Positions 34,565-64,000 of a stretch of 64,000 nt of DNA are shown in pieces. The position numbers and the translations under genes are program-made. This stretch comes from Macrostomum lignano (taxonomy: Eukaryota), in contig NIVC01002451.1 in assembly GCA_002269645.1 (NCBI GenBank), positions 62,001-126,000 on the forward strand. The letters run 5' to 3'. The notes beneath the pieces are model-generated. The model ran no database searches, was not told the DNA's origin, and was given only the letters and a program-made list of their open reading frames with translations. Every line of letters starts with the position of its first letter. Position 1 is the first letter of the stretch.

Positions 34565-36403
<1,839 letters not shown>

Positions 36404-40000: not shown

Positions 40001-43000
40001 GTCAGCAGAGCGATGGGACTTGGACAAGAGTACTACCAGGTGGGTTGTTTCAACTGTCTGACTAATTTGAGACTTTTAGCCCTGGGGTTCTTTATGTTCT
40101 GTGAGACTGTTTTGTATCCTGTCAATTTGGTTTTTGTCTGTCGGACTTGTTTTTAATCTGCCAGACTGGTTTACTAAAACGATTCTCACTTGCAATTCCG
40201 ATGCTGAACCGCAGGCGAATCTCAGCCCCAGCCTGAAACTTCCCGCGGCCTGGTGCGCCCCTGAATGCGTGAAGCGCCAGGTCTTCACTTCGGCCTCCGA
40301 CGTCTGGTCCTACGGCGTCCTCTTGTGGGAGATTTTCACCTACGGCTTCCAGCCGTGGGCCGGCCTCACCAAGCAGCAGATCCTGGCTGCGGTGGACGAG
40401 CCTCAACTCGGTCGACTGAACTGCCCGGATGCGTGTCCGGCCGAGCACTATGCCCTTATGCTGCGCTGCTGGTCTCCCGAGCCGTCAGCTCGGCCAAAGT
40501 TTGCCGAATTGGCTGCCCACCTACCGAAGATTATTCCAGAGCGAATGACGGCCCTGCGCGACTGCGTTGACGAGGACGAGGGTGAAGGCGACGACAACGG
40601 CGAGTCAGATGAAAGATTTTTGCACTTCTCTGCTGGCGACTGTGTTCTAGTGCTGGACAAGAAGGTCGGCGAAGGACTCTGGCGTGGCATTAGGCTGGCC
40701 GGCGGCGGGTCCGGACTCTTCCGGCCCTGGCTAATGAAGACGCAGGACCTGACGCAGTCTGCGGCAACGACCGATAGCGAAGGTAAGTTTGATCGTAGAC
40801 ACCAAAATCCTGTTAGAATGGCAATTTTTACGAAAGGTAAATACATGGAACAGCTTTAAAGATACCTGGGTAGCTGCAAGGTGGCTAGGTGGGGCAGACA
40901 AAGGTGCATCCAAAAGTTATTGTGAATCTTGTAAAATATGTTTTCTTGAATAGTGCTGACTATTTGCGATAAACTGGCGGAGACAGAGCACAAAGCATCA
41001 AAGCAAGGACGTTTCGGATTGGGGCATAAAATTAAATCTAATTTGGTTTGCCTTAAGTGGGATGGCTTCGTTAGGCTTTACTTTATTACTTTACTTTAGG
41101 ATTAACAAAATTGCTATCATTTAGCTCGGGCAAAATCGACTTTGAAAAATCGGAATCGTCGGCACAGCCACTCCGCTGCGACGTTGATATCCGATCCGCA
41201 ATCGTTCCGACACGTTGGACACGTCGGCATCAACGGGGCCGTGTTCGGCGACGTCGGATTGCTGGCTGAGTTCAACGAAGCAATGACGGCGGCGAACGCT
41301 TCTAGGGAAAGACGAAACGACGGAGCTACGTCGCCTGTAGACAATGGCGACGAGCTGCACTTGGGTAGGTGCTGAAGGGAATGCAACCATTTTTGATCTG
41401 TCGGTTGGTAGATTCCACTGCCTTCCCTAAACTCGTAAGTTGGTAAGAGTAACCCTCATCTAGGCAAATTTTGGGGAATTTATTAGTTAGCCTTCATTAT
41501 GATATGTCTTTTTATTATTTTACTCGTATGATCAAAAGGACAGATTCATCGTCTTGTCGCTTCCAGTCGTCCATACTAAACCAGCAAGGCCGTTTATAAT
41601 TTTTATAAGTTTATTCTACTACCCTATATAGCATATATACGCTCGTAGTATTGAATAATCGTATTTATATTTGAGCTACACTACGAGTATATGCACTATA
41701 ATATATTATCTATATAAAAAGTTCAGGTTTTTATTGTATAGAAGTACACGAAATCTGTATACATAAGATGTTATCGCTTGATAAATATCGGAAAACTTGC
41801 ATATTATACACCGATGTTTGTTGGAAACTTTTGGTGTAGCCATCCATGTTTTGGTTCAGTGTGGTTGCCTGCATTTAACAGTGTAGCAAGCGGCAATTTC
41901 CCCAACTCTCCCACTGATCCAGACCTGGGAAACTCACTACTGGACGAAATGTTAAACTACTGGCACACCGACTGCACCAAAGGCGAAGGCGACAGATCGA
42001 CGATCGACCCACTCGACGAGTGCCCAGGCGAAACGGATGCCGAAGCAGCAGCCGTCGACGTTCCTGAAGCGAGGCGACCTCGCGTCGACTCCAACGTGTC
42101 CAGCCTGGTCAGCTCTCTGGCCGACGAGGTTCCAGTCGCCGCAGGACCCGCTGGAAGCGCCAATGATCGTAGGAGGTGCTCGTCTTTACTAGCGATACCA
42201 TCGACCACGGGTCGACTTCACTTTCCTCAGCAGCAGCAGCAGCAGCAGCAGCAGCAAAAGCAACAACAGCAACAGTCTCCAGTGCAGAAGCAAACAAGCA
42301 ATACCGAAAATCAAGGCCAACAGCTGCAACAACAGCAGAAGAAGTACCTTCAACAGCAGCCATCAACTCTGAGGTCGCTGCGGCCGAAGGAGGCATTCCG
42401 AGCTCCACTGGGCGCTCGTCCGCCGCCAAAGCCAGTACGGCCGCTTGAGCCGAATGGCAGCCCGTGGGGCTCCGCGTTCAACGTCAGCCTTGATGCGCCC
42501 GGAGTCGCTGCCGCCAGGTGAGATATGGATGGGACGGGGGTGTCCATCGGGGACTGGCTCTTTGTTGGTTTCATTTGAATTCAAAACATATCAAAATTTG
42601 ACATGCCACTCTTTTTGTCTCCATGGTCACACTTATGCTGCTCGAAAAAAACACAATTGATTCCCAGACAACCAAGGAGTTTGAAATCAAATTAAAAGGT
42701 TGAGTTTATGTAACAGAGATATTTTTCATTCCTGTAACCCTCCACCCAAAGTGACGGCAGCGCACTAAATAGTACGCACTGGATGGCCCAAACCAAACTA
42801 TGATACGTGAGACTCGCATTCTAAAATTGCGCTTGTCTTGCTCAGCTTTGGAGTTTGTTACGCTCGTAGAGGTCACTACGGTGCCACTTAAAACGCATGC
42901 AGTCTTCTCTTTTGCTTGCTATCATTGTCCACACTCGCCCTTCGTGCTGCGAGCCTGCCTGCTCCCGGAGGTGAGCTCGAAATCTTCTTTGCTTGCTAAG

Positions 43001-43495: not shown

Positions 43496-45231
43496 ACTTG
43501 TGAACTTTTAATAGTTTCTTTCTAAACATACTGTTTTTTGCATCTCGATTGTTGTGTTGTGGCACATCGCTTATATTCGAGGACTCGGTCGATTTTTGAT
43601 TAATTAAAGCGTCTCTCTTCCTGATTCATTGCACTTTTACAATGCACTTTGTGCTAACATATTAAGTTTGATAAACTGATCGTCAAAAACACCAAGTAAC
43701 TCTAACTAACACTGCTAAAGCCGGGTTATCAAAACGAGCAATAAATCTTTTGTAACGCTTTTCTTATCGAATAAGTCAATTTTGATAACTGAATTCGATT
43801 ATTCTTTGTGAAAAAACCCGTGCAGCAATCCGACGTTGGCAAATGGGTACTTTTACATTACATCGACGTTTGACTGACGTGTAGCATCACGCCGGTGGAC
43901 GTCGGAGTATTGCACGGTGGAAGGACAACAGAACGCAGCGCTCTTGACAGACTAAAAAGACTGCTGCGTTTTAAACAAAACTATCTCTCTAAGAAGTTCC
44001 TTCACGTGGATAATCCATATTCCTTCTTCCACTGCTTTTATCAATCAGCAAAGCCCGTGAGGCTTCCCTCCGGGCTGGAGGCAGCGCAGGATTTGTTTAT
44101 TCAAGGTTGGTCGGCGGTGCGGCTTCGTTGCTCTGGCCAGCGCTGGGCCTGGAGCCGCCACTTCACTCGTCAATGAGGAGAGAATCTGAAAAAAAGCTGC
44201 TTACTCCTAGGCGAGGGAGCGACTGGATAAAGTGGGGGTTGATAGATCATTTCTGTTCGGTCGATGGGACCAGAGCGGGAGACAGCAGCGGAAATAGGCT
44301 TAGATTTGCTGGGGGGAATTGTAAAGATGAGGATGTGGGAAGTTTCCCGGAACAATAATAAGCTTCGGGCGCTGATTTCGGCTGGCTGAGAGTGGTTATG
44401 AGGAAAATGCGGTCCACGGGGAGGTTATTCCCCGTCAATCCACTGGGGAGCTGATGGAATTCTGAACTGAACAGAGGCATTTTGGTCTAAATATTTGACG
44501 CACATCCTGCCTAAACTACTGCAGTTGCACTTTAACTGGGATTGTAAAACAAGGAATTAACTCTCCACTTGAGTAATCATATTTTCTTGCAAAAAGCGAT
44601 AACGAAACATACATGTAGGACAAGATCATTTGAAACTCGGTTTCACAAGTTTGTCAACTTAGATTTGAAACAGATATTCTTCAGGATTCAATAAGGAAGT
44701 TATAAGTTCTGTTCGTCCCTGTATTTTAGTAATTAGTTGAAGACGTTTTTAACTTTGCTGCATGGATTAAACATGCCTCTATCGCTCTCCGCTTCATTTA
44801 GTTTGCTACGCTTCAGACCAACCAATCAGAATTCGCCAACATTGTGATTCGAGTATTGCAAAATTCCTCCATCCTTGATAGGAGCTTAGTGATAGATAGA
44901 CTAGTATTGGGTGGTTCGAGTCTCAGTGACTCTCGATACGTATCGTCTAGAATCCCTCCGGATCCTGATCTAGGCCTGGATTAACTGCATATCAGTTTAC
45001 GAACTATTGGAGACCGAATAGCCGAATTCTTTTAAAGCAAATCTCCAACTGATCTTCCATCGTCACACTTTTGGGAAGTTCGAGGTAGGCAGCATTGACC
45101 TAGAATTGCAGTACGAGTGTGATAGGAAAAATGCGGTGCTTTTTTTGTAGAAGTTTTGTTCCCATTATTGATTAATGAGCTATTATCTGATACGAGCTAA
45201 TTTGTGGCGTCGACATGAATCGCACGTCTCA

Positions 45232-46456
45232 GAACAGTTGCATCATCCTCCAATACCATTGAGAACCTCTCAACAGTTGCATCATCCTTCAGTACCACTG
45301 AGCACCTCTCAGAACAGTTGCATCATCCTTCAGTACCATTGAGAACCTCTCAGAACAGTTGCATCATCCTTCAGTACCATTGAGAACCTCTCAGAACAGT
45401 TGCATCATCCTTCAGTACCATTGAGAACCTCTCAGAACAGTTGCATCATCCTTCAGTACCATTGAGAACCTCCCAGAACAGTTGCATCATCCTTCAGTAC
45501 CATTAAGAACCTCTCAGAACAGTTGCATCATCCTTCAGTACCATTAAGAACCTCTCAGAACAGTTGCATCATCCTTCAGTACCATTGAGAACCTCTCAGA
45601 ACAGTTGCATCATCCTTCAGTACCATTGAGAACCTCTCAGAACAGTTGCATCATCCTTCAGTACCATTGAGAACCTCTCAGAACAGTTGCATCATCCTTC
45701 AGTACCATTGAGAACCTCTCAGAACAGTTGCATCATCCTTCAGTACCATTGAGAACCTCTCAGAACAGTTGCATCATCCTTCAGTACCATTGAGAACCTC
45801 CCAGAACAGTTGCATCATCCTTCAGTACCATTAGAACCTCTCAGAACAGTTGCATCATCCTTCAGTACCATTGAGAACCTCCAGAACAGTTGCATCATCC
45901 TTCAGTACCATTGAGAACCTCTCAGAACAGTTGCATCATCCTTCAGTACCATTGAGAACCTCTCAGAACAGTTGCATCATCCTTCAGTACCATTGAGAAC
46001 CTCTCAGAACAGTTGCATCATCCTTCAGTACCATTGAGAACCTCCCAGAACAGTTGCATCATCCTTCAGTACCATTGAGAACCTCTCATTGCATCATTCA
46101 GTACCATTGAGAACCTCTCAACAGTTGCATCATCCTTCAGTACCATTGAGAACTCTCAACAGTTGCATCATCCTTCAGTACCATTGAAACCTCACAGAAC
46201 AGTTGCATCATCCTTCAGTACCATTGAAACCTCTCAAACAGTTGCATCATCCTTCAGTACCATTGAAACCTCTCAACAGTTGCATCATCCTTCAATACCA
46301 TTGAGAACCTCTCAACAGTTGCATCATCCTTCATTACCATTGAGAACCTCTCAACAGTTGCATCATCCTCTAATACCATTGAGAACCTCTTAGAGAACAG
46401 TTGCATCATCCTTCAGTACCATTGAGAACCTCTCAGAACAGTTGCATCATCCTTCA
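45232..46456. repeat. Minisatellite, 41-bp unit CAGTTGCATCATCCTTCAGTACCATTGAGAACCTCTCAGAA
   Basis: About 30 tandem copies ending about 27 bp before the aquaporin ATG. Confidence 0.95.
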
Positions 46457-50267: not shown

Positions 50268-50843
50268 GTGACAAGTTCAGTGTGACAAGTTCAGTGTGAC
50301 AAGTTCAGTGTGACAGGTTCAGTGTGACAAGTTCAGTGTGAGAAGTTCAGTGTGACAAGTTCAGTGTGACAAGTTCAGTGTGACAAGTTCAGTGAGACAA
50401 GTTCAGTGTGACAAGTTCAGTGTGACAAGTTCAGTGTGAGAAGTTCAGTGTAACAAGTTCAGTGTGACAGGTTCAGTGTGACAAGTTCAGTGTGAGAAGT
50501 TCAGTGTGACCAGTTCAGTGTGACAAGTTCAGTGTGACAAGTTCAGTGTGACAAGTTCAGTGTGACCAGTTCAGTGTGACAAGTTCAGTGTGACCAGTTC
50601 AGTGTGACAAGTTCAGTGTTACAAGTTCAGTGTGACAGATTAAGTGAGACAAGTTCAGTGTGACAAGTTCAGTGTGACAAGTTCAGTGTGACAAGTTCAG
50701 TGTGACCAGTTCAGTGTGACAAGTTCAGAGAGACAAGTTCAGTGTGACAAGTTCAGTGTGACAAGTTCAGTGTGACAGATTCAGTGTGACAGGTTCAGTG
50801 AGACAAGTTCCGTGTGACAAGTTTAGTGGGACAAGTTCAGTGT
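50268..50843. repeat. Minisatellite, 14-bp unit TGTGACAAGTTCAG with scattered substitutions
   Basis: About 40 tandem copies. Confidence 0.95.
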
Positions 50844-51403
50844 GCAAGTCCAGCCGGATATTCTCTCTGGAGAATCAATTTCGAGAAATTTCATATTTTC
50901 TTCGTTTCCATCTCACTGCCAGTGCAGGATAGAATTCCTGCAAACCGCCTTGCTACAGTGTGCTCAATATAAGGTTCTCAAGTATGCCATTCATTCTCAG
51001 CTCACTACTTCAGCTCACCCTGCCTCCTCCTGACTCCTCCTGCAGAAGCAGAAGCAAGGCAGGACCCGTTAACCAGTATTACAGATCGATCCTGTGGCAG
51101 AATCTGATTTTATCTCTCCCCCACACCCAGTCTCCCCGCCTCCCCATCGCTGTCCCAACCCTTATCTCACTGATGGATGGGGATTTCCGTGATTAAATTA
51201 TCATCTACTCGGGATTGTGCCACCTTCAGCGCCTCTCCAATCTTGCCTGTCGCTCTCCTCCTATCTTCTTCTAATTTCTGCTTCTAGTGCCTCTGCTGCA
51301 GCGTCTGCTGCAACTTGGCTCATAAATCTTGCAACATGGCATAAGGCTATACATTTATTCATTTACTAATGTAAATGGGAGCACAATAAGTTTACTGTAG
51401 GAA

Positions 51404-52249
51404 CTTATCCCACCGAGCTTATCCCACCGAGCTTATCCCACCGAGCTTATCCCACCGAGCTTATCCCACCGAGCTTATCCCACCGAGCTTATCCCACCGA
51501 GCTTATCCCACCGAGCTTATCCCACCGAGCTTATCCCACCGAGCTTATCCCACCGAGCTTATCCCACCGAGCTTATCCCACCGAGCTTATCCCACCGAGC
51601 TTATCCCACCGAGCTTATCCCACCGAGCTTATCCCACCGAGCTTATCCCACCGAGCTTATCCCACCGAGCTTATCCCACCGAGCTTATCCCACCGAGCTT
51701 ATCCCACCGAGCTTATCCCACCGAGCTTATCCCACCGAGCTTATCCCACCGAGCTTATCCCACCGAGCTTATCCCACCGAGCTTATCCCACCGAGCTTAT
51801 CCCACCGAGCTTATCCCACCGAGCTTATCCCACCGAGCTTATCCCACCGAGCTTATCCCACCGAGCTTATCCCACCGAGCTTATCCCACCGAGCTTATCC
51901 CACCGAGCTTATCCCACCGAGCTTATCCCACCGAGCTTATCCCACCGAGCTTATCCCACCGAGCTTATCCCACCGAGCTTATCCCACCGAGCTTATCCCA
52001 CCGAGCTTATCCCACCGAGCTTATCCCACCGAGCTTATCCCACCGAGCTTATCCCACCGAGCTTATCCCACCGAGCTTATCCCACCGAGCTTATCCCACC
52101 GAGCTTATCCCACCGAGCTTATCCCACCGAGCTTATCCCACCGAGCTTATCCCACCGAGCTTATCCCACCGAGCTTATCCCACCGAGCTTATCCCACCGA
52201 GCTTATCCCACCGAGCTTATCCCACCGAGCTTATCCCACCGAGCTTATC
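51404..52249. repeat. Homogeneous minisatellite, 14-bp unit CTTATCCCACCGAG, about 60 copies
   Basis: No variant copies seen. Confidence 0.98.
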
Positions 52250-53010: not shown

Positions 53011-54016
<1,006 letters not shown>

Positions 54017-54690
54017 CCCTCCTTCCACCTCTCTTTTTTCTTCTTTCGGTCCATTGATCAGACCTTTTTCGCAAATTTTCAAGTTCTACGAGTGCTGGAA
54101 TTCTTCTCCCTGCAGTTTCAGCAGCCGTGTTCATCGTCAGAGAGGAGCAAAGCAGACTTTTTCGTAGCTGGTCCCATAAGGCTGTCTGTTCATGCTCGGG
54201 GAAGCAGGTCGATTGGACGAATAGTGAGTAAGACAGAGACAGCCTGGATGAGGCGAGGGCAGCGAGAAAAGCAACAGAGAATGGCTGGAGAGCCATACGC
54301 TTTTCTATACTAGCAGACTTCTTCAGCTCAAGTAGAGGCCATCACGCATGAGAGCCTCCTAGATTATTGTAGGGTTCTGGGAGCGGCTCGGCGTAAAATC
54401 GGGCTTGCGAGTTTTAGACTAATGCGAGCCCGATTTAAGCTGATAGTGGGCAACTTGAAACTATAAAAGCTATGTCAATAGGAGTCACCGAGTTCGAGTA
54501 AAGTATTTGTTTGGTCCAATTAGTTGCAAGCATTAGCAACGAATGAGTCAATTTTGATCTGAGTGGAGCAGTACCGGAACGGTGAAACTACGAAGCGCTA
54601 TCCGGGAAGGATCACAGAGTGCAAGCAAAGTTCAAGAGGACTTGAAATCTTACGTTATTGTCTCGAGTGAGGTTCTGCGAAAGGAGAGGG

Positions 54691-57199
54691 AAGGAGACAA
54701 TGAGGGGGAAGGAGACACAATGAGGGGGAAGGAGACAATGAAGGGGAAGGAGACACAATGAGGGGGAAGGAGACACAATGAGGGGGAAGGAGACAATGAA
54801 GGGGAAGGAGACACAATGAGGGGGAAGGAGACACAATGAGGGGGAAGGAGACACAATGAGGGGGAAGGAGACAATGAAGGGGAAGGAGACACAATGAGGG
54901 GGAAGGAGACAATGAAGGGGAAGGAGACACAATGAGGGGGGAAGGAGACACAATGAGGGGGGAAGGAGACACAATGAGGGGGAAGGAGACACAATGAAAT
55001 GGAAGAGACACAATGATGGGGAAGATACACAATGTGGTGAAGAGACACAATGAGGTGAAGAGACACAATGAGGTGAAGATACACAATGAGGGGGGAAGAG
55101 ACACAATGAGGTGAAGATACACAATGAGGGGGAAGAGACACAATGAGGGGGAAGAGACACAATGAGGGGGGAAGAGACACAATGAGGTGAAGATACACAA
55201 TGAGGGGGAAGAGACACAATGAGGTGAAGAGACACAATGAGGGGGAAGAGACACAATGAGGTGAAGATACACAATGAGGGGGGAAGAGACACAATGAGGG
55301 GGGAAGAGACACAATGAGGTGAAGAGACGCAATGAGGTGAAGATACACAATGAGGGGAGGAGACAATGAGGGGGAAGAGACACAATGAGGTGAAGAGACA
55401 CAATGAGGGAAGAGACACAATGAGGTGAAGATACACAATGATGGGGAAGAGACACAATGAGGTGAAAGAGACACAATGAGGTGAAGAGACACAATGAGGT
55501 GAAGATACACAATGATGGGGAAGAGACACAATGAGGGGGAAGAGACACAATGAGGGGGGAAGAGACACAATGAGGTGAAAGAGACACAATGAGGTGAAGA
55601 GACACAATGAGGTGAAGAGACACAATGAGGGAAAGAGACACAATGAGGTGAAGATACACAATGATGGGGAAGAGACACAATGAGGTGAAAGAGACACAAT
55701 GAGGTGAAGAGACACAATGAGGTGAAGAGACACAATGAGGTGAAGAGACACAATGAGGTGAAGAGACACAATGATGGGGAAGAGACACAATGAGGGGAAG
55801 AGACACAATGATGGGGAAGAGACACAATGAGGTGAAAGAGACACAATGAGGTGAAGAGACACAATGAGGTGAAGAGACACAATGAGGTGAAGAGACACAA
55901 TGAGGTGAAGAGACACAATGATGGGGAAGAGACACAATGAGGTGAAAGAGACACAATGAGGGGGAAGAGACACAATGAGGGGAAGAGACACAATGAGGTG
56001 AAGAGACACAATGAGGTGAAGATACACAATGATGGGGGAAGAGACACAATGAGGGGAAGAGACACAATGAGGTGAAGAGACACAATGATGGGGGAAGAGA
56101 CACAATGAGGGGAAGAGACACAATGAGGGGAAGAGACACAATGAGGTGAAGATACACAATGATGGGGGAAGAGACACAATGAGGTGAAAGAGACACAATG
56201 AGGAGGAAGAGACACAATGAGGTGAAAGAGACACAATGAGGGGGAAGAGACACAATGAGGGGAAGAGACACAATGAGGTGAAGATACACAATGATGGGGG
56301 AAGAGACACAATGAGGGGAAGAGACACAATGAGGGGAAGAGACACAATGAGGAGGAAGAGACACAATTAGGGGAAGGAGACACGATGAAGTGGAAGAGAC
56401 ACAATGAGGGGAAGATACACAATGATGGGGGAAGAGACACAATGAGGGGAAGAGACACAATGAGGAGGAAGAGACACAATTAGGGGAAGGAGACACGATG
56501 AAGTGGAAGAGACACAATGAGGTGAAAGAGACACAATGAGGTGAAAGAGACACAAAGAGATAAAAGAGACACAATGAGGTGAAGAGACACAATGAGGGGG
56601 AAGAGACACAATGAGGTGAAGAGACACAATGAGGTGAAGATACACAATGAGGGGGAAGAGACACAATGAGGGGGAAGAGACACAATGAGGGGAAGAGACA
56701 CAATGAGGAGGAAGAGACACAATTAGGGGAAGGAGACACGATGAAGTGGAAGAGACACAATGAGGGGAAGAGACACAATGAGGTGAAAGAGACACAATGA
56801 GGTGAAAGAGACACAAAGAGATAAAAGAGACACAATGAGGTGAAGAGACACAATGAGGGGGAAGAGACACAATGAGGTGAAGAGACACAATGAGGTGAAG
56901 ATACACAATGAGGGGGAAGAGACACAATGAGGGGAAGAGACACAATGAGGTGAAAGAGACACAATGAGGGGAAGAGACACAATGAGGGGAAGAGACACAA
57001 TGAGGGGAAGAGACACAATGAGGTGAAGAGACACAATGAGGTGAAGAGACACAATGAGGGAAAGAGACACAATGAGGTGAAGAGACAAAATGTGGTGAAG
57101 AGACACAATGAGGGGAAGAGACACAATGAGGGGAAGAGACACAATGAGGGGAAGAGACACAATGAGGGGAAGAGACACAATGAGGGGAAGAGACACAAT
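54691..57199. repeat. Purine-rich minisatellite, 18-21-bp unit with core GAGACACAATGAGG(G/T)GAA, cut by the LTR element
   Basis: More than 100 variable copies; the last unit GAGACACAAT abuts the LTR. Confidence 0.97.
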
Positions 57200-57469
57200 T
57201 GTTTTGATGGTTCATTCAATAAATTGAGTCTTCGCAGTAAGCGACTATTTTTCGGCTACTAGCCAACCGAACAAAACAACCAGCGTGCGCACTCTCTCTG
57301 GAGAGGCTGATAACTATATATTGCAATAATTTTAAATAAATGGGGTGGGTGCTGCTGAACATTATAAATGGGGGCTGGGGCTGAAACGTACGTATCAAAA
57401 TCTCTGCTATGAAAGTTACGCGTAGGTGAATGAAAAGTACACTCGTACATGTAAGCCAACTCCTAAACA
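57200..57469 (-). repeat. 3' LTR, 270 bp, termini TGTTT...AAACA
   Basis: Preceded on the minus strand by the PPT; direct repeat of 63964-64000; TATATA at 57320-57315. Confidence 0.92.
57213..57256 (-). other. Spliced-leader-like sequence inside the LTR: GCCGAAAAATAGTCGCTTACTGCGAAGACTCAATTTATTGAATG
   Basis: The 3' 33 nt match 31/33 to the M. lignano SL as I recall it (CGGTCTCTTACTGCGAAGACTCAATTTATTGCATG); also present in the 5' LTR at 63977-64000 and beyond. Confidence 0.8.
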
Positions 57470-57481
57470 TTCCCCCCTTCC
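57470..57481 (-). other. Polypurine tract GGAAGGGGGGAA
   Basis: Immediately precedes the TG of the 3' LTR on the minus strand. Confidence 0.85.
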
Positions 57482-58077
57482 TGACAGAGCAATGTCAGCA
57501 ACAAAGACCGGAAACACTGAACTTGAGTACCTAGTAACCGAACGGACAAACTATGACCATAGCAAAAAAAAACATACAACGCCTGGGAACAGCACGAGAA
57601 GCGTGAGGGCTCAAAAGAGCTCAAAAGCCAAACTGAAAAGATGTTTCGGCACCCGCCACCAAGACTCGCAAATGAAAACAATGAAAATGCGCAAGACCGC
57701 AAACTGAAATAAGTTACCACTAAACATCAAAAAATATAAAAATTTGCAACTCAGCTTAAACTCGCAATTTTAATAAAGTCGAAAATGGTTGACAGAAAAA
57801 ACCCATCACCGTAACTTAACAGAAACTTCAAACAGCTCAAACTCAAAGGAAAAACAAATGCGCCAACTGCGCTCCAAAAAAATCTGATCCCAAAAAAAAC
57901 CATGAACAAAAACAGACACAACCAATAATCAAAAAGGCAACGGCTTGAAAAGCCCAAAACTGGCAGAAAGCCTACTGAACGCACACGATACAGTACAAAC
58001 AATTTGAAAACTCAGCGTAAACTCGGAAAAGTCCGGAAAAGAAAACAAACAGTTCTTAAGCAAATGATCAACTCCTC

Positions 58078-61000
58078 TCACTCGAGATAGCACAGTTTGC
58101 TCACAGGCCGCACGAATACCGTCCCACCGACCTGGACCTTGGCCACCCGGACTCGATTGTCTGAACCTGGGTAGACTTCGACTACTCGTCCCAACGGCCA
58201 GTGTCCCCGCGGTGAGTCTGCTTTGATGACGAGAACGACATCACCTGGCTGTAAATCACGCTGCGGTCCCGCCCACTTGGCTCTCGGCTGCAACCCTGGC
58301 AGCCATTCGCGCATCCAGCGTCGCCAGACGTGCCTCACGAGTTCTTGGACGCGCCGCCACCGCCGCCTCGGGTCAGCCGCGACGTCGTCGGGCACATCCG
58401 GCGCGAATTGTCCACCAGCTTGACCGTGCAGGAAATGGTTTGGCGTTAGTGGCTCTTCGTCTCTCGGATTCGCCGATTGATAGGTGATGGGGCGCGAGTT
58501 GATAAGCGCCTCCGCTCCAGTGATCGCTGACTGAAGCTCCTCGTCGGTGACATCTGCGCTGCCCAGAATCGCGTGTAGCGCTCGCTTCGCAGCCCGAATC
58601 ATCACCTCGTGGGCTCCACCAAAGTGCGGGGCGGCTGGCGGCTGGAAGTTCCACTTGACTCGCTGCTTGGATGTCTCGCGACTGATCCTTGTCCTGTCCA
58701 GCTCCTCCAGAAGTCGCAGTTCATCTGCACCTTTTACAAAGTTGCCACCGTTGTCAGAATACATAGCCTTGGGTAAGCCACGCCTGTTCACCATTCGGTA
58801 GAAGGCGTTCAAGAAAGAGTCCGCGTCAAGGCTGTAGGTCATCTCGAGGTGTACCGCTCGCGTCTCGAGGCATGTGAACAGCGCCAAATAGCGTTTCTGC
58901 CTCTTCTTAAATCGGCCTTGAATAGTGACGAACGGCCCTCCCATGTCGACGGCTACGTTCGTGAAGGCTTTTAAGGATCCTGCGACACGGGCATCAGGCA
59001 GTGGCGCCATCTGTTGTACGATGGGACGAGCTTTCTCTCTCTTGCACACAGCGCATTCAACCTCCCACTCGCGAATAGCTTCCCGAGCACAGATAACCCA
59101 ATACTTGGCTGACAGCGCCGCCAGAGTTTGGTTAGTCCCACCATGGCTCTGCTGCTCGTGATATTGTTTGATGATCAGCTTGGTGATCCAATGCTTCCGC
59201 GGCAAAATAGATGGATGTCTTGCTGCAAATGGCGCCTGTGGCCTGAATTTCAACCGGCCATCCACTCGTAGGACTCCTGCTGCATCACGTACCGGCTGCA
59301 AGCACCGCAGCTTCTTCTCGTTCACTGTATCCGTCTTGAACGCTTCCTCCTGAGCTAACCTTACCAAACGCTCCTCGACCTCCTCGAGCTCATCCACCAA
59401 CAGCTCACCGCCGCTCCGCTGATACTTCTCCGTCTGACAGTTCCGAATGAACCGCAACACCCAAGCGAAGACGCGCTGCAGTCGATGGAAACTAGAGAAT
59501 CGCTCTGGTTTGAGTCGCCAGCCTGTCTTGTCTTCTTCATCGGTGGTGACCAGACATACGGGCTCTGCACAACGCTTCTGGATGCTTGCTAGCTCTCTTC
59601 GACGGGTATTCGCCTCAGTAGTTTCTGGCGCAACTGGAATCAACATTTCTGGCCAATCGTTTGAGCACCTCGCCAAGAATCCAGGGCCGTTCCACCACAG
59701 CTCGTTGTCCATCAGCTCTTGCACACTGCAGCCACGGGATGCCACATCCGCTGGATTCAGACCTGTTGGAACGTACCGCCATTGATTTGGCTGCACCTGC
59801 TGCTGGATGAAGGCGACTCGGTTCGCAACGAAAGGCTTGAACGCTCTACTCTGCCTGCGAATCCACCAAAGCACATTGTGACTGTCACTCCAAAACACCA
59901 CAGACTCAATCGCGATCTCCAACGCCTCGGCCACTGCCCTTGCGAGCCGAAGTCCTAGGACTGCCGCCATCAACTCCAGTCGAGGGATGCTCACCGCCAT
60001 CAATGGTGCTACCTTAGCCTTTGCAGCAACGAAACGGACCGTCGTCTTACTCATCGTTTCGCTCCGCAGATATACGACGGCTCCGTAGGCCTCTTGCGAT
60101 GCGTCTACAAACGAGTGAAGTTCGATGGATCCGTTGTCTGGACGCAGACACCGAGGCACGGCTAGTCTCGTAGCTTTGGAGAGCTCACTGGTCCACTGAA
60201 ACGCTTGATCAGCCAACTCAGGATCCAACGCTTCATCCCACCCAACACCTTGTTGCCATGCCAACTGCAGCATTATCTTTCCTGTGATAACTACCGGAGC
60301 TAGGAAGCCACAGGGGTCAAACACCTCGGCCACACCGCGCAAAAGCAGTCTCTTCGTCATCACCTTGCCGCTAGCATTCGACTCGCTGATGGAAATTCCT
60401 AGGACGTCCTCTTTCGCATTCCAATTCACTCCAAGCGCCTTAGCGGTTCGGGCCTCACCTTTCAATAGCAACTCGGCGCGTTCTGCGCGGTCCTCGACTG
60501 GAACGTGTTGCAGCACTTCTAACGAATTCGACATCCATTTGCAAGCTCGCATCCCTGCCTTGCTCCATAATTCTACGAGTTGTTGGAAGAGTTTCACCGC
60601 TTGGCCAACGGTTTCTACGGAGTCTAGACTGTCGTCCATATAAGTGGAATGCAGCACGGTGTTGGCCGCCAGCGGCAGCTGTTGCTGATAGTGTCGCGCA
60701 TTCTCCTGTGCCACAAACTGAGCCAGAAACGGAGAGCAGTTTACGCCAAATACCACACTGCAGAACTCATAGCTCTTCGGCGTTTGCTTCAAGTCTAAGT
60801 CTCGCCACAGAAATCGGAAAAATCTTCTGTCCTCCGGCGCAATTCGAACTCTCAGATACATCTCCTCGATGTCGGCTGCTAGCGCCACGGGATGCTTCCG
60901 GAACCGTAGGAGCACCTTTAGCAAATCCTGCTGCAACTTCGGTCCCGTATGAATGGTGTCATTTAGGCAGACCCCATTGCTCCGAGCCGCTGCATCAAAC

Positions 61001-63102
61001 ACAATTCGAACTTTGGTCGTCTCCTTATCGGCCCGCACTATCGCGAAATGCGGCAAGAACCACTGGCCAGCCTGACTTGGCTCGCTGATGCCGACCTCCC
61101 GCACATAGCCTTTTGCCAGATGCTTGTCTATCACAGCCTGGTACGCCTTCGCTAGCTCCGGGTTCTTCAGCAAGCGCTTTTCTGTGCTGACGAGACGCTG
61201 TAGGGCAGCTTCGTTGTTCATAGGTAGTTCTTCCGGATTCTTTTTCCAAGGAATCGCCACTTGAAACCTGCCGTTCTCCATCTTCAAGGATGCTCGTGTC
61301 GCTTCTACGATCTTTTGATCTTCAGCGGACATTCTGGCCTGCTGTCCTCCATCTGGCACTTCATCGATCTCCCACATCTTCCGCAGAAGATCAGATGCCT
61401 CGTTCTCCGCCGTCACCGTAAAGAATGTCTGCTGCTGCTGCTCTTCTGCAGTTCCTACTTGATTCACTGGTCCAACGCAGGTCCACCCAATTGGCGTCAG
61501 TCTGGCAATCGGCTCTCCAGGTTGCCCACCTACTTCGCGACAGGCAAAGTGCAAGTCTGCATTGTCCACACCAATGAGCATATCCACAGTCTGCTTCCCT
61601 TTAATTTTGTCGAACGGCACGCCCCTCAGATGAGCCCAACGCTTTGCAAGCTGGCTCCAATCTACGGCTTCCATCCCACCGGTCACTTTCTCAGTTGTGT
61701 GGGCCGTAACTGTGGCACGAAAGGCGCCGTCCAGACTGCGGATGTCGACCTCAACCGGAACCGTCTGAAAGGTGCTCACCTGGCCGTTCAGAACCTTTAC
61801 CGTCATCGGTTCGAGGTTGCCTTCCAAGCCGAGTTCCGCTGCAACGTCAGAGTTCAGGTACGACCGGGTGCTAGCGTCGTCCAGCAAGACATTCACTCGG
61901 ACTTCCCGACCGCCGTTGGATAAAATCACGGGCACAGTCCTCAGCGCTATTGACGGCGATGTTCTGGCCAGTAAAGTGCATGCCTCTTGCGGCTCTTGAA
62001 CTGTGCTCTTCTTCTCCTGGAAGGACTTTGGTCTTTCGATCGTTTTGGGCGACCCCCCTTCATGCGGATTCGCCGTTGTCGCCGCCGGCCCTCGTTGATG
62101 CAGCAGCCGATTATGGTTTGCTTTGCAGCCATCAACACCGCACACTCTCGCTCGCTTGCACGCACCGGCTAGATGGTTTGCTCCCAAGCAGCAGAAGCAC
62201 AGGCGCTTGTCACGAACCGTCGCCCATCTGGCTCCAGGTTCCATTCGTTGAAACCTTGGGCAGCTCCAAACTCCGTGCTGTTCTCCGCAGAGACCACAAC
62301 CTTTTCGCCCTTCCGCCTGTTCTTTGTTTTGGCTATTCGAATCATTCGTCTTCACAAAAAACGAGCGTGCTGCGGCTGCCCCTCGGGAAACAGTTTTCTT
62401 GGCTTTTACACTGTCGTGCCGTCCGGTCTCACCGGAAGAAGCCACGCCTCTTACCGCCTCACACGCTACTGTCATGTACTCTGCCTCCGTCAGAAGCCAT
62501 CGATGCAACGTTCTGAGCGAATCTTCTTTCCTAGCTTCTCCGATCCACCGATGAAAACGAGCTAGGGTTTCGGTTGGCAGCTTCTTTTGCACTCTCAAGT
62601 ACATAAGTCCATTGTTGCTTAGCTCACTCTCTCGCCCTGCAGCCTGTAGATTAACTACCGTAACATCCAGCAAGTCGGCCAGCTTTTTTAATTGACTTGC
62701 ATTCTCTATCTGAATAGGTTGGAAACTATCCAAGTCCTCCAGTGCCAGCATCAGTCTTCGTCTCTCTCCACCATACTCCCGCTCAAGCCTTTCCAGAGCC
62801 GCTTTGTAGGCGAACTCCGAGTAGCCAAGATTCGCAACAAGTTTTAATGCCTCTCCTCGCAGCGACTGGCGCAATTGCAACAACTTATAGGCTTCTGAAG
62901 ATGGCGAGGCATGCACGCAGGCATAGAAAGCCGCCCGCCATCCTTCAAACTCCCGTTTGTCTCCACTAAACACCGGTATCGCAACTCTCTGCAACTGCCT
63001 CCACATATCCTGACCGATTCTTTCCTCAGCCCAAGCTTTCGCTGTACATTCTGCTGCGGCGGCCGGTGAAGCCCCAATTGGCGAATTAGCTCCACCGTAC
63101 AT
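58078..63102 (-). CDS. BEL/Pao Gag-Pol polyprotein, 1674 aa
   Basis: DUF1759-like IPVFSGDKREFEGW; three Cys/His knuckles; protease LLDDASTRSYL; RT TYMDD; RNase H FVDASQEAYGAVVY; integrase H..H..CAVC, DMGGP, SDNG, HEVM; DUF5641-like WRRVQELVRHVWRRW. Order PR-RT-RH-IN. Confidence 0.97.
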   Translation of the reverse strand: MYGGANSPIGASPAAAAECTAKAWAEERIGQDMWRQLQRVAIPVFSGDKREFEGWRAAFYACVHASPSSEAYKLLQLRQSLRGEALKLVANLGYSEFAYKAALERLEREYGGERRRLMLALEDLDSFQPIQIENASQLKKLADLLDVTVVNLQAAGRESELSNNGLMYLRVQKKLPTETLARFHRWIGEARKEDSLRTLHRWLLTEAEYMTVACEAVRGVASSGETGRHDSVKAKKTVSRGAAAARSFFVKTNDSNSQNKEQAEGRKGCGLCGEQHGVWSCPRFQRMEPGARWATVRDKRLCFCCLGANHLAGACKRARVCGVDGCKANHNRLLHQRGPAATTANPHEGGSPKTIERPKSFQEKKSTVQEPQEACTLLARTSPSIALRTVPVILSNGGREVRVNVLLDDASTRSYLNSDVAAELGLEGNLEPMTVKVLNGQVSTFQTVPVEVDIRSLDGAFRATVTAHTTEKVTGGMEAVDWSQLAKRWAHLRGVPFDKIKGKQTVDMLIGVDNADLHFACREVGGQPGEPIARLTPIGWTCVGPVNQVGTAEEQQQQTFFTVTAENEASDLLRKMWEIDEVPDGGQQARMSAEDQKIVEATRASLKMENGRFQVAIPWKKNPEELPMNNEAALQRLVSTEKRLLKNPELAKAYQAVIDKHLAKGYVREVGISEPSQAGQWFLPHFAIVRADKETTKVRIVFDAAARSNGVCLNDTIHTGPKLQQDLLKVLLRFRKHPVALAADIEEMYLRVRIAPEDRRFFRFLWRDLDLKQTPKSYEFCSVVFGVNCSPFLAQFVAQENARHYQQQLPLAANTVLHSTYMDDSLDSVETVGQAVKLFQQLVELWSKAGMRACKWMSNSLEVLQHVPVEDRAERAELLLKGEARTAKALGVNWNAKEDVLGISISESNASGKVMTKRLLLRGVAEVFDPCGFLAPVVITGKIMLQLAWQQGVGWDEALDPELADQAFQWTSELSKATRLAVPRCLRPDNGSIELHSFVDASQEAYGAVVYLRSETMSKTTVRFVAAKAKVAPLMAVSIPRLELMAAVLGLRLARAVAEALEIAIESVVFWSDSHNVLWWIRRQSRAFKPFVANRVAFIQQQVQPNQWRYVPTGLNPADVASRGCSVQELMDNELWWNGPGFLARCSNDWPEMLIPVAPETTEANTRRRELASIQKRCAEPVCLVTTDEEDKTGWRLKPERFSSFHRLQRVFAWVLRFIRNCQTEKYQRSGGELLVDELEEVEERLVRLAQEEAFKTDTVNEKKLRCLQPVRDAAGVLRVDGRLKFRPQAPFAARHPSILPRKHWITKLIIKQYHEQQSHGGTNQTLAALSAKYWVICAREAIREWEVECAVCKREKARPIVQQMAPLPDARVAGSLKAFTNVAVDMGGPFVTIQGRFKKRQKRYLALFTCLETRAVHLEMTYSLDADSFLNAFYRMVNRRGLPKAMYSDNGGNFVKGADELRLLEELDRTRISRETSKQRVKWNFQPPAAPHFGGAHEVMIRAAKRALHAILGSADVTDEELQSAITGAEALINSRPITYQSANPRDEEPLTPNHFLHGQAGGQFAPDVPDDVAADPRRRWRRVQELVRHVWRRWMREWLPGLQPRAKWAGPQRDLQPGDVVLVIKADSPRGHWPLGRVVEVYPGSDNRVRVAKVQVGGTVFVRPVSKLCYLE

Positions 63103-63403
63103 AGCTTGGATACCTAGCTGTCCGCGGGTTGGTTAGAATCAGCGTGGTCACACTTGCCGCCAGTTGGGGTGGGTGGTATTGATTTTTCTCCGGCCTTTAC
63201 TCTCTCACCCCCTTGCTCAGCGCTCCTTAGTTGATCTGACCCTCCCCAATTAAGGGGTTGACTGAAGGGTCGGCTTGAACCATGGGGTTGGCGACTGGTA
63301 CTGAGTACGCAGCTTGCGATTGGACGGCCGCTTCTACCCGTAGTTGAGAGGAGTACAATTGATCATTTGCACTCGCTGACGTCTCTGCCAGTCTTAGCGC
63401 ATC

Positions 63404-63901
63404 CTATCTGACATCTAACTCGCGCTGCCTCTCTGCAAACTCCTGCTGCATTCTGCGCTCCTCCTCCTCCATCTCTATCCGCTGCCGCCTGACTGCCTCC
63501 AACTCCTTCTGTCGCATCTCTTTCTGCTCGATCTCCCTCGACTCTAGTCGCACCTCTCGTTCCCTCTTGCGCAATTCTCTCAGCAAATTTACAATCTCAC
63601 CGTACTCAGTCTCCAGCTTTTCCAACTCCTTTACTGTCTGGACTTGCACTGGTAGATTCCCGACGACCTCGGGCAGAATCGCTTGTAGCACCGCACTAAC
63701 TCGCTCGTAGTGGTCATCCAGAGTGCCGGCCAGCGGTTCCACGTCCGCTAAAGTAGCTCCGTCCGAGCCCAATACCTTCAGTAGACGATTCCGCTGCTTC
63801 GTGAACGCGCACTTGTCGACCGCTTTTCTGGCCTTCAGCGAAATGAGACGGCTGTCTCCCTCCGGCACTTGTTCTTGCATCTCTGCTTCTTCATCAGACA
63901 T
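63404..63901 (-). CDS. Upstream ORF1 of the BEL/Pao element, 165 aa, coiled-coil (gag N-terminal-like)
   Basis: First long ORF after the PBS; E/R/K/Q-rich helical C-terminal half; TAG stop at 63404. Confidence 0.7.
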   Translation of the reverse strand: MSDEEAEMQEQVPEGDSRLISLKARKAVDKCAFTKQRNRLLKVLGSDGATLADVEPLAGTLDDHYERVSAVLQAILPEVVGNLPVQVQTVKELEKLETEYGEIVNLLRELRKREREVRLESREIEQKEMRQKELEAVRRQRIEMEEEERRMQQEFAERQRELDVR

Positions 63902-63943
63902 CTTTTACCAATGAAGTAGAACCACAAGTAGAACCACAAGTAG

Positions 63944-63961
63944 AACCACGCTCTGCTACCA
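63944..63961 (-). other. Primer binding site TGGTAGCAGAGCGTGGTT, complementary to the 3' end of initiator tRNA-Met
   Basis: Lies 2 nt after the CA end of the 5' LTR; resembles the tRNAiMet PBS consensus TGGTAGCAGAG..TGGTT. Confidence 0.8.
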
Positions 63962-63963
63962 GA

Positions 63964-64000
63964 TGTTTTGATGGTTCATTCAATAAATTGAGTCTTCGCA
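63964..64000 (-). repeat. 5' LTR, U5 end, partial
   Basis: Identical to 57200-57236. Confidence 0.92.

What the first reader, a model, noticed from the sequence alone, without database searches (positions are those of the whole stretch)
57213..57256. An LTR retrotransposon carries the host spliced-leader (SL) sequence in its own LTR
Seen: the minus (sense) strand of the LTR reads TTGTTTTGTTCGGTTGGCTAGTA-GCCGAAAAATAGTCGCTTACTGCGAAGACTCAATTTATTGAATG-AACCATCAAAACA. The visible part of the 5' LTR is identical, and the PBS follows it. A TATATA lies about 60 nt upstream, and a T-rich tract with two AGs sits directly in front. No GT donor follows the ATG, so this is not an SL-RNA gene. The ATG opens a 7-codon uORF (MNHQNIW*) that ends in the PBS. 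Knowledge, from memory: the M. lignano SL ends in CGGTCTCTTACTGCGAAGACTCAATTTATTGCATG (31/33 match here) and I recall it starting GCCGTAAAGA; flatworm SLs end in AUG. Inference: the element captured the SL by reverse transcribing its own trans-spliced RNA and keeps it as the R/U5 region. That would let minus-strand strong-stop DNA made from an SL-capped genome still anneal to the 3' R, so first-strand transfer survives trans-splicing. It might also mimic SL-dependent translation or host-self recognition. I know of no description of SL mimicry in an LTR.
Basis: partly seen in the sequence, partly recalled or inferred. Interest (0 to 1): 0.92.

Follow-up and report, generated by a model that had tools for sequence, protein, structure and literature searches.

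The report
Host spliced-leader copy inside a retrotransposon LTR
A flatworm BEL/Pao retrotransposon carries, 13 bases before the end of its terminal repeat, a slightly diverged full-length copy of the host's trans-spliced leader exon; this is most simply a scar of a trans-spliced element RNA having been reverse transcribed, and no function has been shown for it.

Summary
Window 57213-57256 (minus strand) aligns end to end with the 45-nt Macrostomum spliced leader (SL): 39 matches, 5 mismatches, 1 gap, including a 25-nt exact run. It lies at positions 214-257 of a 270-nt LTR (57200-57469, TGT..ACA). The element is a BEL/Pao retrotransposon with an uninterrupted 1674-aa pol ORF. The visible 37 nt of the 5' LTR are identical and are followed by a clade-conserved primer-binding site (PBS).

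Similarity to a genuine SL RNA gene from a metagenome contig is confined to the exon. It starts at SL nucleotide 1 and stops at the splice-donor boundary. There is no GTAAG donor, no Sm site, no SL-RNA fold and no promoter similarity. That supports RNA-level capture from a trans-spliced element transcript.

No AG acceptor sits at the block's 3' edge, so today's element cannot be trans-spliced in register. It is also unresolved whether the block lies in R or in U5.

No other copy of the family could be reached, so conservation versus neutral decay is open. I found no prior description in the searchable literature. It is a new variant of known SL relics, moderately to highly interesting, and rests on one copy.

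The parts
57213..57256 (-). SL-derived block (44 nt), LTR positions 214-257. It is a copy of the 45-nt Macrostomum spliced-leader exon and ends in the SL's ATG (57213-57215).
   Evidence: 39 matches, 5 mismatches, 1 gap against the published SL; 25-nt exact run; E = 2e-9. SL from PMC8629364 and PMC10468722 and from the SL RNA gene in L005.
57200..57212 (-). The last 13 nt of the LTR (AACCATCAAAACA), ending in CA. Inferred to be the exon part of the ancestral trans-spliced leader and the integrase end.
   Evidence: Sequence read. The same 13 nt precede the PBS in the 5' copy.
57200..57469 (-). Complete 3' LTR, 270 nt, TGT...ACA.
   Evidence: Starts right after the polypurine tract and ends where identity with the 5' copy ends and the satellite begins.
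57470..57482 (-). Polypurine tract AGGAAGGGGGGAA.
   Evidence: Read. The relative L008 has an analogous purine tract immediately before its 3' LTR.
57257..57282 (-). G/T-rich tract TGGTTGTTTTGTTCGGTTGG followed by CTAGTA. Together with the block's first G (57256) this reads TAGTAG directly in front of the block. It could be a weak acceptor-like site or a poly(A) downstream element.
   Evidence: The acceptor consensus [T/C]TNCAG comes from PMC8629364.
57315..57322 (-). AATATATA: a TATA-like box and/or the variant poly(A) hexamer AATATA. A second TATA-like motif, TATAAT, lies at 57361-57366.
   Evidence: Motif positions. No AATAAA or ATTAAA occurs in the LTR.
58078..63102 (-). gag-pol ORF, 1674 aa, with no internal stop. 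Pfam domains in order along the protein: DUF1759 (gag-like), Asp protease, RVT_1 (with YMDD), Peptidase_A17 (the Pao family marker), integrase zinc finger, DUF5641.
   Evidence: Pfam, motif check, about 50% identity over 98-100% of its length to BEL/Pao polyproteins of other animals.
63404..63901 (-). ORF1, 165 aa, charged and probably coiled-coil, the first ORF after the leader. It has no detectable homologue.
   Evidence: It is separated from the pol ORF by about 300 nt with stops in all three frames.
63944..63961 (-). Primer-binding site TGGTAGCAGAGCGTGGTT, 2 nt after the LTR end.
   Evidence: An identical 18-mer sits at the same place in relative L007. L008 has TGGTAGCAGAGGATGGTT there. 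That this complements the 3' end of initiator tRNA-Met is from memory.
63964..64000 (-). Visible end of the 5' LTR (37 nt). It holds the last 24 nt of the SL block plus the 13-nt terminus.
   Evidence: 100% identical to 57200-57236.
63956..63979 (-). 7-codon uORF (MNHQNIW*) opened by the SL-derived ATG and closed by the TAG inside the PBS.
   Evidence: Read.
63914..63949 (-). Perfect 3 x 12-nt tandem repeat (GTGGTTCTACTT) overlapping the 3' end of the PBS, in the leader.
   Evidence: TRF.
54688..57199 (.). 18-nt satellite array (about 135 units) directly abutting the 3' LTR end. It is the insertion context.
   Evidence: TRF.

Best explanation
The block is a DNA-encoded relic of the host spliced leader inside the LTR of a young, apparently coding-competent BEL/Pao retrotransposon.

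Most likely history:
1. An ancestral element had a trans-splice acceptor 13 nt before the end of its LTR.
2. One genomic RNA was trans-spliced there, giving cap-SL-AACCATCAAAACA-PBS.
3. Minus-strand strong-stop DNA primed at the PBS copied those 13 nt and the whole SL to the RNA's 5' end.
4. A non-homologous or microhomology-guided first-strand transfer joined it to the 3' U3/R.
5. Normal completion of reverse transcription then placed U3-(old R)-SL-13 nt in both LTRs.

The new variant stayed replication competent. The SL is now simply part of its 5' leader, in U5 or the R/U5 border, and its AUG opens a 7-codon uORF.

A plausible selective benefit is that the capture replaced the outron and acceptor. 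That fixes the 'spliced' leader in DNA and removes a site whose use would strip R from the genomic RNA. Otherwise the block is a passenger.

Shown: identity of the block, its exact exon boundaries, its place in the LTR, its presence in both LTRs, and the intact pol.
Inferred: the ancestral acceptor, the aberrant strand transfer, the R/U5 assignment, and any benefit.
For: - Match to the SL: 39/45 with a 25-nt exact run. The SL sequence was verified in PMC8629364, PMC10468722 and in a genuine SL RNA gene, L005:615-659.
- Homology to the SL RNA gene is limited to the exon. The upstream local alignment scores 20 against 19.3 +/- 3.9 for shuffles. The downstream one scores 19 against 19.4 +/- 4.2.
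- The gene continues with GTAAG and folds into three hairpins with a U-rich Sm-like site (z = -3.3). The LTR continues with AACCATC and shows no such fold (z = -0.1).
- The block starts at SL nucleotide 1, the cap site, and ends at the donor boundary. That is the signature of a mature spliced leader copied from RNA.
- It is joined to the element's own 13-nt LTR end and PBS. The PBS is conserved in relatives at about 50% protein identity.
- Both LTRs carry it. By the logic of LTR reverse transcription, that is expected only for sequence copied from the RNA's 5' end.
- BEL/Pao identity and an open 1674-aa pol.
- The block already differs from the SL at 6 positions while the two LTR ends are identical. 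It is therefore inherited element sequence, not cDNA contamination.
Against: - Only one element copy was available. The 5' LTR is seen for just 37 nt. No SL-less ancestor or sister family was found, so the ancestral acceptor is hypothetical.
- First-strand transfer without R homology is a rare event.
- The 6 differences are unevenly placed, 5 in the first 16 nt and 1 in the last 29 (p = 0.017, post hoc). This could mean that the 3' part is under selection, which would be function rather than relic. It could equally come from error-prone copying near the capped 5' end or from a variant SL gene.
- The acceptor-like tract immediately upstream of the block is not predicted by the simple model.
- TSS and poly(A) site are unknown.
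- ORF1 and pol are separated by about 300 nt with stops in all frames, so full competence of this copy is not certain.
- Host identity is not independently confirmed.
Confidence: 0.6

Rival explanations
1. Functional SL mimicry. The element keeps the SL as its R region so that strong-stop DNA made on a trans-spliced, SL-capped genome can still anneal to the 3' R. Alternatively, its RNA looks like a trans-spliced host mRNA for translation, export or escape from silencing.
For: - The block lies in the leader between the TATA-like motifs and the PBS.
- The 3' 29 nt of the block are almost unchanged (1 difference) while the 5' 16 nt carry 5 (p = 0.017). Selection on the 3' part, or partial 'refreshing' of R from genuine SL during early strand transfer, would predict this.
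- pol is intact, so the block has been carried by a working lineage.
- AATGAA, formed by the SL's ATG, could be a weak poly(A) hexamer that places the cleavage site near the LTR end.
Against: - No AG acceptor at the block's 3' edge (GAATG|AACC), so a genuine SL cannot be spliced in register.
- The upstream TAGTAG fits [T/C]TNCAG poorly, and using it would create tandem SLs, which are not observed.
- The C-to-A change 4 nt before the end of the block persists, which argues against refreshing from genuine SL.
- A Pol II LTR transcript would carry an m7G cap rather than the trimethylguanosine cap. In nematodes the SL sequence works together with that cap (established knowledge; not tested here).
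- The leader has no unusual predicted structure (z = -0.66).
- No conservation data.
Confidence: 0.15
2. Capture by template switching onto a foreign RNA. While copying the element's leader, reverse transcriptase jumped after 13 nt onto a co-packaged host trans-spliced mRNA or SL-containing RNA. The element's own RNA was therefore never trans-spliced.
For: Retroviral reverse transcriptases switch templates often and co-package host RNAs (established knowledge). The end product would look the same as.
Against: The jump would have to land exactly on the last nucleotide of the SL exon of the foreign RNA. A junction that coincides with the splice junction is explained without coincidence if the element RNA itself was trans-spliced. 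No foreign mRNA sequence lies between the SL and the element's 13 nt.
Confidence: 0.08
3. DNA-level origin. The LTR picked up part of an SL RNA gene by recombination, gene conversion or read-through after inserting next to one. The reverse is also conceivable, that the SL exon descends from this repeat.
For: SL RNA genes are multi-copy (eight copies of a 109-bp gene in the deduplicated M. lignano assembly, PMC8629364). Other retroelement families are known to associate with SL genes (from memory).
Against: No similarity beyond the exon on either side. No donor, Sm site or SL-RNA fold. The element sits in an 18-nt satellite, not in an SL gene. The SL is identical in three Macrostomum species and in L005, whereas the LTR copy is the diverged one.
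Confidence: 0.04
4. Chance resemblance or assembly artefact (cDNA contamination, chimeric read).
For: None beyond the fact that only one locus was seen.
Against: A 25-nt exact run and 39/45 identity; 0 of 100 shuffles gave a match; about 1e-6 such matches are expected per genome. The block is present in both LTRs of the element, 6.7 kb apart. It differs from the SL at 6 positions and is continuous with LTR sequence on both sides.
Confidence: 0.01

Closest known systems
Relict spliced leaders of dinoflagellate retrogenes ('mRNA recycling', Slamovits & Keeling 2008; reviewed in PMC3229502, PMC6050394, PMC5585692)
   Same: A DNA-encoded copy of the SL sits at the 5' end of a transcribed unit. It is bounded by the SL exon ends and is explained by reverse transcription of a trans-spliced RNA. 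The relic decays by mutation.
   Different: Those are host retrogenes made by someone else's reverse transcriptase. Their relics are usually truncated at an internal AG and stacked in tandem. Here a single, full-length relic lies inside the LTR of an autonomous retrotransposon, so it is copied at every replication cycle. The host is an animal (flatworm).
SL-gene-specific non-LTR retrotransposons (SLACS, CZAR, CRE1/2 of trypanosomatids; NeSL-1 of nematodes). Recalled from memory, not tested here.
   Same: A physical association between a retroelement and SL sequence. The element's transcripts can start with SL-derived bases.
   Different: Those are non-LTR elements that insert into SL RNA genes at a fixed site, so the SL belongs to the target. 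Here the SL is part of the element's own LTR, the element is BEL/Pao, and it sits in a satellite.
Genuine Macrostomum SL RNA gene (109 nt; PMC8629364; example L005:615-723)
   Same: The 45-nt exon sequence (39/45).
   Different: No GTAAG donor, no Sm-like site, no three-hairpin fold, no shared flanks. It cannot donate a leader.
Cellular-sequence transduction by retroviruses and LTR elements through aberrant strand transfer or read-through (established retrovirology)
   Same: Host-derived RNA sequence is fixed in a retroelement through an irregular reverse-transcription event and is then inherited.
   Different: What was captured here is not a gene fragment but the 45-nt leader added to the element's own RNA by the host's trans-splicing machinery. 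It landed in the LTR.
LTR / trans-splice-site interplay in tapeworms (ta-TRIM solo LTRs splicing onto ancestral SL acceptor sites; PMC4558846)
   Same: Flatworm LTR transcripts interact with the SL trans-splicing system.
   Different: In that case an LTR donor competes with the SL for a host acceptor. No SL sequence is encoded in the LTR.

Membership tests
BEL/Pao LTR retrotransposon (Belpaoviridae) | Polyprotein with the Pao-type domain (Peptidase_A17), RT and integrase in BEL/Pao order | tested here: met
   Pfam: DUF1759 at 45-183, Asp_protease_2 at 397-454, RVT_1 at 727-852, Peptidase_A17 at 916-1074 (E = 4e-48), Integrase_H2C2 at 1307-1359, DUF5641 at 1580-1673. YMDD at residue 821. About 50% identity over the full length to BEL/Pao proteins of other animals.
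BEL/Pao LTR retrotransposon (Belpaoviridae) | Two direct LTRs with TG..CA ends, PBS after the 5' LTR, polypurine tract before the 3' LTR | tested here: met
   3' LTR 57200-57469 is TGT..ACA. PPT at 57470-57482. The 37 visible nt of the 5' LTR are identical. PBS at 63944-63961 is shared with relatives L007 and L008. The rest of the 5' LTR is outside the window.
BEL/Pao LTR retrotransposon (Belpaoviridae) | Target-site duplication flanking the element | not testable with these tools
   The 5' flank lies beyond base 64000.
SL RNA gene | SL exon sequence | tested here: met
   39/45 identity to the exon of L005 and the published SL.
SL RNA gene | GT splice donor immediately after the exon | tested here: not met
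   ATG|AACCATC in both LTR copies, against ATG|GTAAG in L005.
SL RNA gene | Sm-binding site and three-hairpin SL RNA fold | tested here: not met
   L005:615-723 folds with z = -3.3 and has a U-rich site between hairpins 2 and 3. The LTR-derived 108 nt give z = -0.1 and no such fold. No Rfam hit for either.
SL RNA gene | Shared upstream promoter region | tested here: not met
   The upstream 100 nt align no better than shuffles (20 against 19.3 +/- 3.9). Only one reference gene was available.
Relict-SL retrocopy (as in dinoflagellate mRNA recycling) | Genome-encoded SL bounded by the SL cap site and the donor boundary, fused to downstream transcript sequence | tested here: met
   The block begins at SL nucleotide 1 and ends at the SL's ATG, fused to the element's 13-nt LTR end and PBS.
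Relict-SL retrocopy (as in dinoflagellate mRNA recycling) | Transcripts of the copy are again trans-spliced, giving tandem truncated relics | tested here: not met
   Only one SL-like block occurs in the LTR and in the whole window. RNA data are not available.
SL-gene-targeting retrotransposons (SLACS/CZAR/CRE/NeSL) | Non-LTR element inserted at a fixed position inside an SL RNA gene | tested here: not met
   The element has LTRs and a BEL/Pao pol. Its 3' flank is an 18-nt satellite. The SL lies inside the LTR.
   No RNA end data. Motifs allow either reading: TATATA or AATATA at LTR 148-155, G/T-rich tract at 188-207, AATGAA at 254.
   No AG at the block's 3' edge. The nearest AGs are at LTR 210 and 213 (in front of the block) and at 224 and 239 (inside it). 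Acceptor consensus [T/C]TNCAG.

The most novel reading that the evidence does not exclude
The SL copy is not a scar but an adaptation. On this reading a retrotransposon encodes the host's spliced leader in its R/U5 so that its RNA passes as a trans-spliced host mRNA. Possible benefits are translation, stability, neoblast or germline expression, or evasion of transposon surveillance. Alternatively, reverse transcription could tolerate or exploit trans-splicing of the genomic RNA. The near-perfect 3' 29 nt of the block would then reflect purifying selection or repeated refreshing from genuine SL.
Probability: 0.15. Interest if true: 0.88.

Novelty: new variant of a known kind. Interest (0 to 1): 0.62.

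Why it matters
If confirmed across the family, this would show three things about an animal: an LTR-retrotransposon genomic RNA was SL trans-spliced, the spliced RNA was reverse transcribed and integrated, and the resulting lineage stayed viable.

That makes the conflict between trans-splicing and LTR replication directly testable. Trans-splicing removes the 5' R region, and LTR replication needs R. It also offers a natural reporter for what an encoded SL does without a trimethylguanosine cap.

There is a practical consequence too. Macrostomum trans-splice sites are annotated by pulling SL-containing reads, trimming them and mapping the rest (PMC5730564, PMC10468722). LTR-encoded SL copies with 2 mismatches in 33 nt could be counted as trans-spliced 5' ends. 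Conversely, 100%-match searches for SL genes (PMC8629364) would miss them.

Tried and rejected
**Looking for further copies or family members (all failed)**
- ORF1 against the protein database: no hit.
- pol: best 50% identity, all from other animals.
- Exact-protein look-up: nothing on record.
- SL-core pattern in viral contigs: 0.
- pol in viral contigs: 0.
- LTR against the rest of the window: only 11-13-mers.

**Host identification**
- Through glycogen phosphorylase: no Macrostomum protein in the database.

**RNA-level checks**
- Rfam: no family for the block, the window or the SL gene.
- Leader RNA structure: not distinguishable from shuffles.

**Relatives' LTRs**
- L007 and L008 confirm the PBS. 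They are not alignable in the LTR and carry no Macrostomum SL.

**Ideas considered and rejected**
- SL RNA gene or pseudogene: no donor, no Sm site, no flank similarity.
- 'R refreshed every cycle from genuine SL': there is no in-register acceptor, and the C-to-A change persists.
- Treating TATATA firmly as the promoter: it overlaps an AATATA that has a textbook downstream G/U-rich element, so the R/U5 borders cannot be called from sequence.
- Poly(A) signal usage from the five metatranscriptome mRNAs: the contigs do not end in poly(A), so this was uninformative.

**Supplements**
- The M. lignano LTR-family paper has no supplementary files held as text.

Full report
**1. What is in the sequence**

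On the minus strand the window ends in a retrotransposon that runs from beyond base 64000 down to 57200.

- Its large ORF (58078-63102, 1674 aa, no internal stop) carries DUF1759, an aspartic protease, RVT_1 with YMDD, Peptidase_A17 (the Pao marker, E = 4e-48), an integrase zinc finger and DUF5641.
- It is about 50% identical over its whole length to BEL/Pao polyproteins from many animals.
- A polypurine tract (57470-57482) is followed by a 270-nt LTR, TGT...ACA (57200-57469).
- The LTR's last base abuts an 18-nt satellite array at 54688-57199.
- Only the last 37 nt of the 5' LTR are inside the window (63964-64000), and they are identical to the 3' copy.
- Two bases further on lies TGGTAGCAGAGCGTGGTT (63944-63961).
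- The same 18-mer sits at the same place in a relative from a Logan assembly (L007). TGGTAGCAGAGGATGGTT sits there in a relative from an ENA assembly that has perfect 362-nt TG..CA LTRs (L008).
- This is therefore the clade's primer-binding site. From memory, it is the complement of the 3' end of initiator tRNA-Met.

**2. The block**

LTR positions 214-257 (window 57256-57213) read GCCGAAAAATAGTCGCTTACTGCGAAGACTCAATTTATTGAATG.

- The M. lignano SL is published as the 35-mer CGGTCTCTTACTGCGAAGACTCAATTTATTGCATG (PMC8629364).
- The full 45-mer GCCGTAAAGACGGTCTCTTACTGCGAAGACTCAATTTATTGCATG is given for M. cliftonense, and a 43-mer for M. hystrix (PMC10468722 supplement).
- A scan of metagenome contigs with the SL core found five mRNA-like contigs that begin with this leader. 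It also found one genomic contig, L005, with a genuine SL RNA gene.
- In that gene the same 45 nt are followed by GTAAG, a U-rich Sm-like site and two more hairpins. It is 109 nt long, as published, and folds with z = -3.3.
- The LTR block aligns end to end with the 45-mer: 39 matches, 5 mismatches, one 1-nt gap, and a 25-nt exact run.
- This is far beyond chance.

**3. What it is not**

It is not an SL RNA gene or pseudogene.

- The 100 nt upstream of the block and the sequence downstream of it align to the flanks of the genuine gene no better than shuffled sequence. Scores are 20 against 19.3 +/- 3.9, and 19 against 19.4 +/- 4.2.
- There is no donor, no Sm site and no SL-RNA fold.
- It is not an assembly artefact or cDNA contamination. 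It is present in both LTRs, is continuous with LTR sequence, and has six differences from the SL.

**4. How it most likely arose**

The similarity starts at SL nucleotide 1, the cap site, and stops exactly at the exon's last base. There it is joined to the element's own final 13 LTR bases and PBS.

A sequence with those two boundaries exists in the cell only as the leader of a trans-spliced RNA. The simplest source is the element's own genomic RNA, trans-spliced at an acceptor that once lay 13 nt before the LTR end.

In LTR reverse transcription, whatever lies between the PBS and the RNA's 5' end is copied into strong-stop DNA and ends up in both LTRs. That matches the block's presence in both copies.

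The step that needs an irregular event is the first-strand transfer, because a trans-spliced RNA has lost its 5' R. A non-homologous or microhomology-guided jump is assumed, not shown. I note that GCC at the block's start completes a GGCTA-G-TAGCC palindrome across the junction.

After the event, the old promoter, R and poly(A) signals in U3/R would be unchanged and the SL would replace the outron and acceptor. The lineage would then be immune to trans-splicing at that site. That is a possible advantage, and it is inferred.

**5. Does it do anything now?**

This could not be tested. I could reach no second copy of the family in any collection, so 'conserved more than its flanks' remains open.

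- First, the block's 3' edge is GAATG|AACC with no AG, so a genuine SL cannot be added in register. The AGs in front (TAGTAG) fit the M. lignano trans-acceptor motif [T/C]TNCAG poorly (PMC8629364) and would produce a tandem SL-SL leader. Only one block is present.
- Second, the R/U5 borders are ambiguous. The LTR has no AATAAA or ATTAAA. The 'TATATA' overlaps AATATA, which is followed by CA dinucleotides and a G/U-rich tract at LTR 188-207, the classic layout of a poly(A) site. That would place the block in U5, whereas the strand-transfer model needs it in R. An alternative promoter motif (TATAAT at LTR 104) exists, and a weak AATGAA is created by the SL's ATG.
- Third, the six differences from the SL are unevenly spread: five in the first 16 nt and one in the last 29 (hypergeometric p = 0.017, post hoc). 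This is the one hint of constraint on the 3' part. It is equally explained by error-prone copying next to the capped 5' end, by a variant SL gene as donor, or by chance.

The leader has no unusual predicted structure (z = -0.66).

**6. State of this copy**

pol is open and has its RT motif. The first ORF after the leader (63404-63901, 165 aa, no homologues) is separated from pol by about 300 nt with stops in all frames. Relatives encode one 1800-1900-aa protein. This copy may therefore carry damage in the gag N-terminal region, or it may use two ORFs. LTR identity is known for only 37 nt.

**7. Comparison with what is known**

- The closest phenomenon is the relict SL of dinoflagellate retrogenes, where trans-spliced mRNAs are reverse transcribed and re-integrated (PMC3229502, PMC6050394, PMC5585692). 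The present case differs in host, in being full length and single, and above all in lying inside the LTR of an autonomous element, so that it replicates with it.
- SL-gene-targeting non-LTR elements (SLACS, CZAR, CRE, NeSL; from memory) associate with the SL by insertion specificity, not by carrying it.
- Tapeworm ta-TRIM LTRs interact with SL acceptor sites but encode no SL (PMC4558846).
- Papers on M. lignano trans-splicing, its genome and its LTR families (PMC8629364, PMC5730564, PMC12801592, PMC10468722) do not mention an SL in an LTR.
- A full-text search for the SL core sequence returned only the 2016 transcriptome paper.
- Within the limits of open-access text, I found no prior description.

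**8. Verdict**

RNA-mediated capture of the host SL into a BEL/Pao LTR is well supported by the exact exon boundaries. The adaptive readings are possible but unsupported, and one of them faces a concrete mechanical objection.

The finding rests on one element, and the host genus is inferred only from the SL itself. The window's very high minisatellite content (about a quarter of it) fits the repeat-rich M. lignano genome described in PMC5730564, but that is weak evidence.

I rate it a new variant of a known kind. It is of moderate to high interest, and it can be settled quickly with the public Macrostomum assemblies and RNA data.

Noticed in passing
L005:615-723 (metagenome contig Ga0302322_100095745): A complete, canonical Macrostomum-type SL RNA gene sits in an environmental metagenome contig: 45-nt exon, GTAAG donor, U-rich Sm-like site, three hairpins, z = -3.3. 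Seventeen nt upstream of the exon there is a partial duplicate of its first bases (GCCGTAAAC). A long ORF follows at about 1774-2922.
   Followed up: partly
L001-L004, L006 (Ga0316592 contigs): Five mRNA-like contigs from one JGI sample begin with the Macrostomum SL, all with the canonical ...TTGCATG ending. A Macrostomum-like worm was therefore present in that environmental sample. None carries the LTR variant (GTCGC / TTGAATG).
   Followed up: partly
window 63914-63949 (-): A perfect threefold 12-nt tandem repeat GTGGTTCTACTT overlaps the 3' end of the PBS, in the leader before ORF1. Its first unit shares GTGGTT with the PBS. It could be a packaging or dimerisation element, or slippage.
   Followed up: no
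window 63951-63961 (-): The PBS itself contains TAGCAG|AG, a partial match to the M. lignano trans-splice acceptor motif [T/C]TNCAG. Trans-splicing there would give a translatable RNA that cannot be reverse transcribed. This is purely a sequence observation.
   Followed up: no
window 63102-63404 (-): About 300 nt with stops in all three frames separate ORF1 (165 aa, no homologues) from the gag-pol ORF. Relatives encode a single 1800-1900-aa protein. This is either damage in the gag N-terminal region of this copy or a two-ORF layout.
   Followed up: partly
window 54688-57199: An 18-nt satellite (GGGAAGAGACACAATGAG, about 135 units) directly abuts the LTR end. It generates long spurious ORFs of up to 854 aa (54655-57219).
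   Followed up: partly
window 1-54016 (many sites): Roughly a quarter of the window is tandem arrays with 14-42-nt units (for example 1325-2347, 2769-3952, 12089-13734, 19556-20459, 45227-46456, 50268-50853, 51404-52249). There are also two microsatellites longer than 1 kb, (AGAT)n at 34565-35743 and (GTTA)n at 53011-54016. Several arrays lie between exons of host genes.
   Followed up: no
window 17134-19459 (-), 4783-7110 (-), 9512-10357 (-), 27038-28144 (+), 40101-40859 (+): Host gene fragments: glycogen phosphorylase (two large exon ORFs), a Tudor-domain protein, a C2H2 zinc-finger protein, a Sina-like zinc-finger protein, and a tyrosine-kinase domain followed by SH3 (Pfam). A 31-nt minisatellite at 17908-18262 spans the gap between the two phosphorylase ORFs and overlaps both by a few tens of bases.
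   Followed up: partly
protein database: Neither the element's proteins nor the host's highly conserved glycogen phosphorylase has a near-identical entry (best 50% and 70%). The host genus therefore seems absent from the searchable protein collection. This is why no sibling copies could be retrieved.
   Followed up: yes
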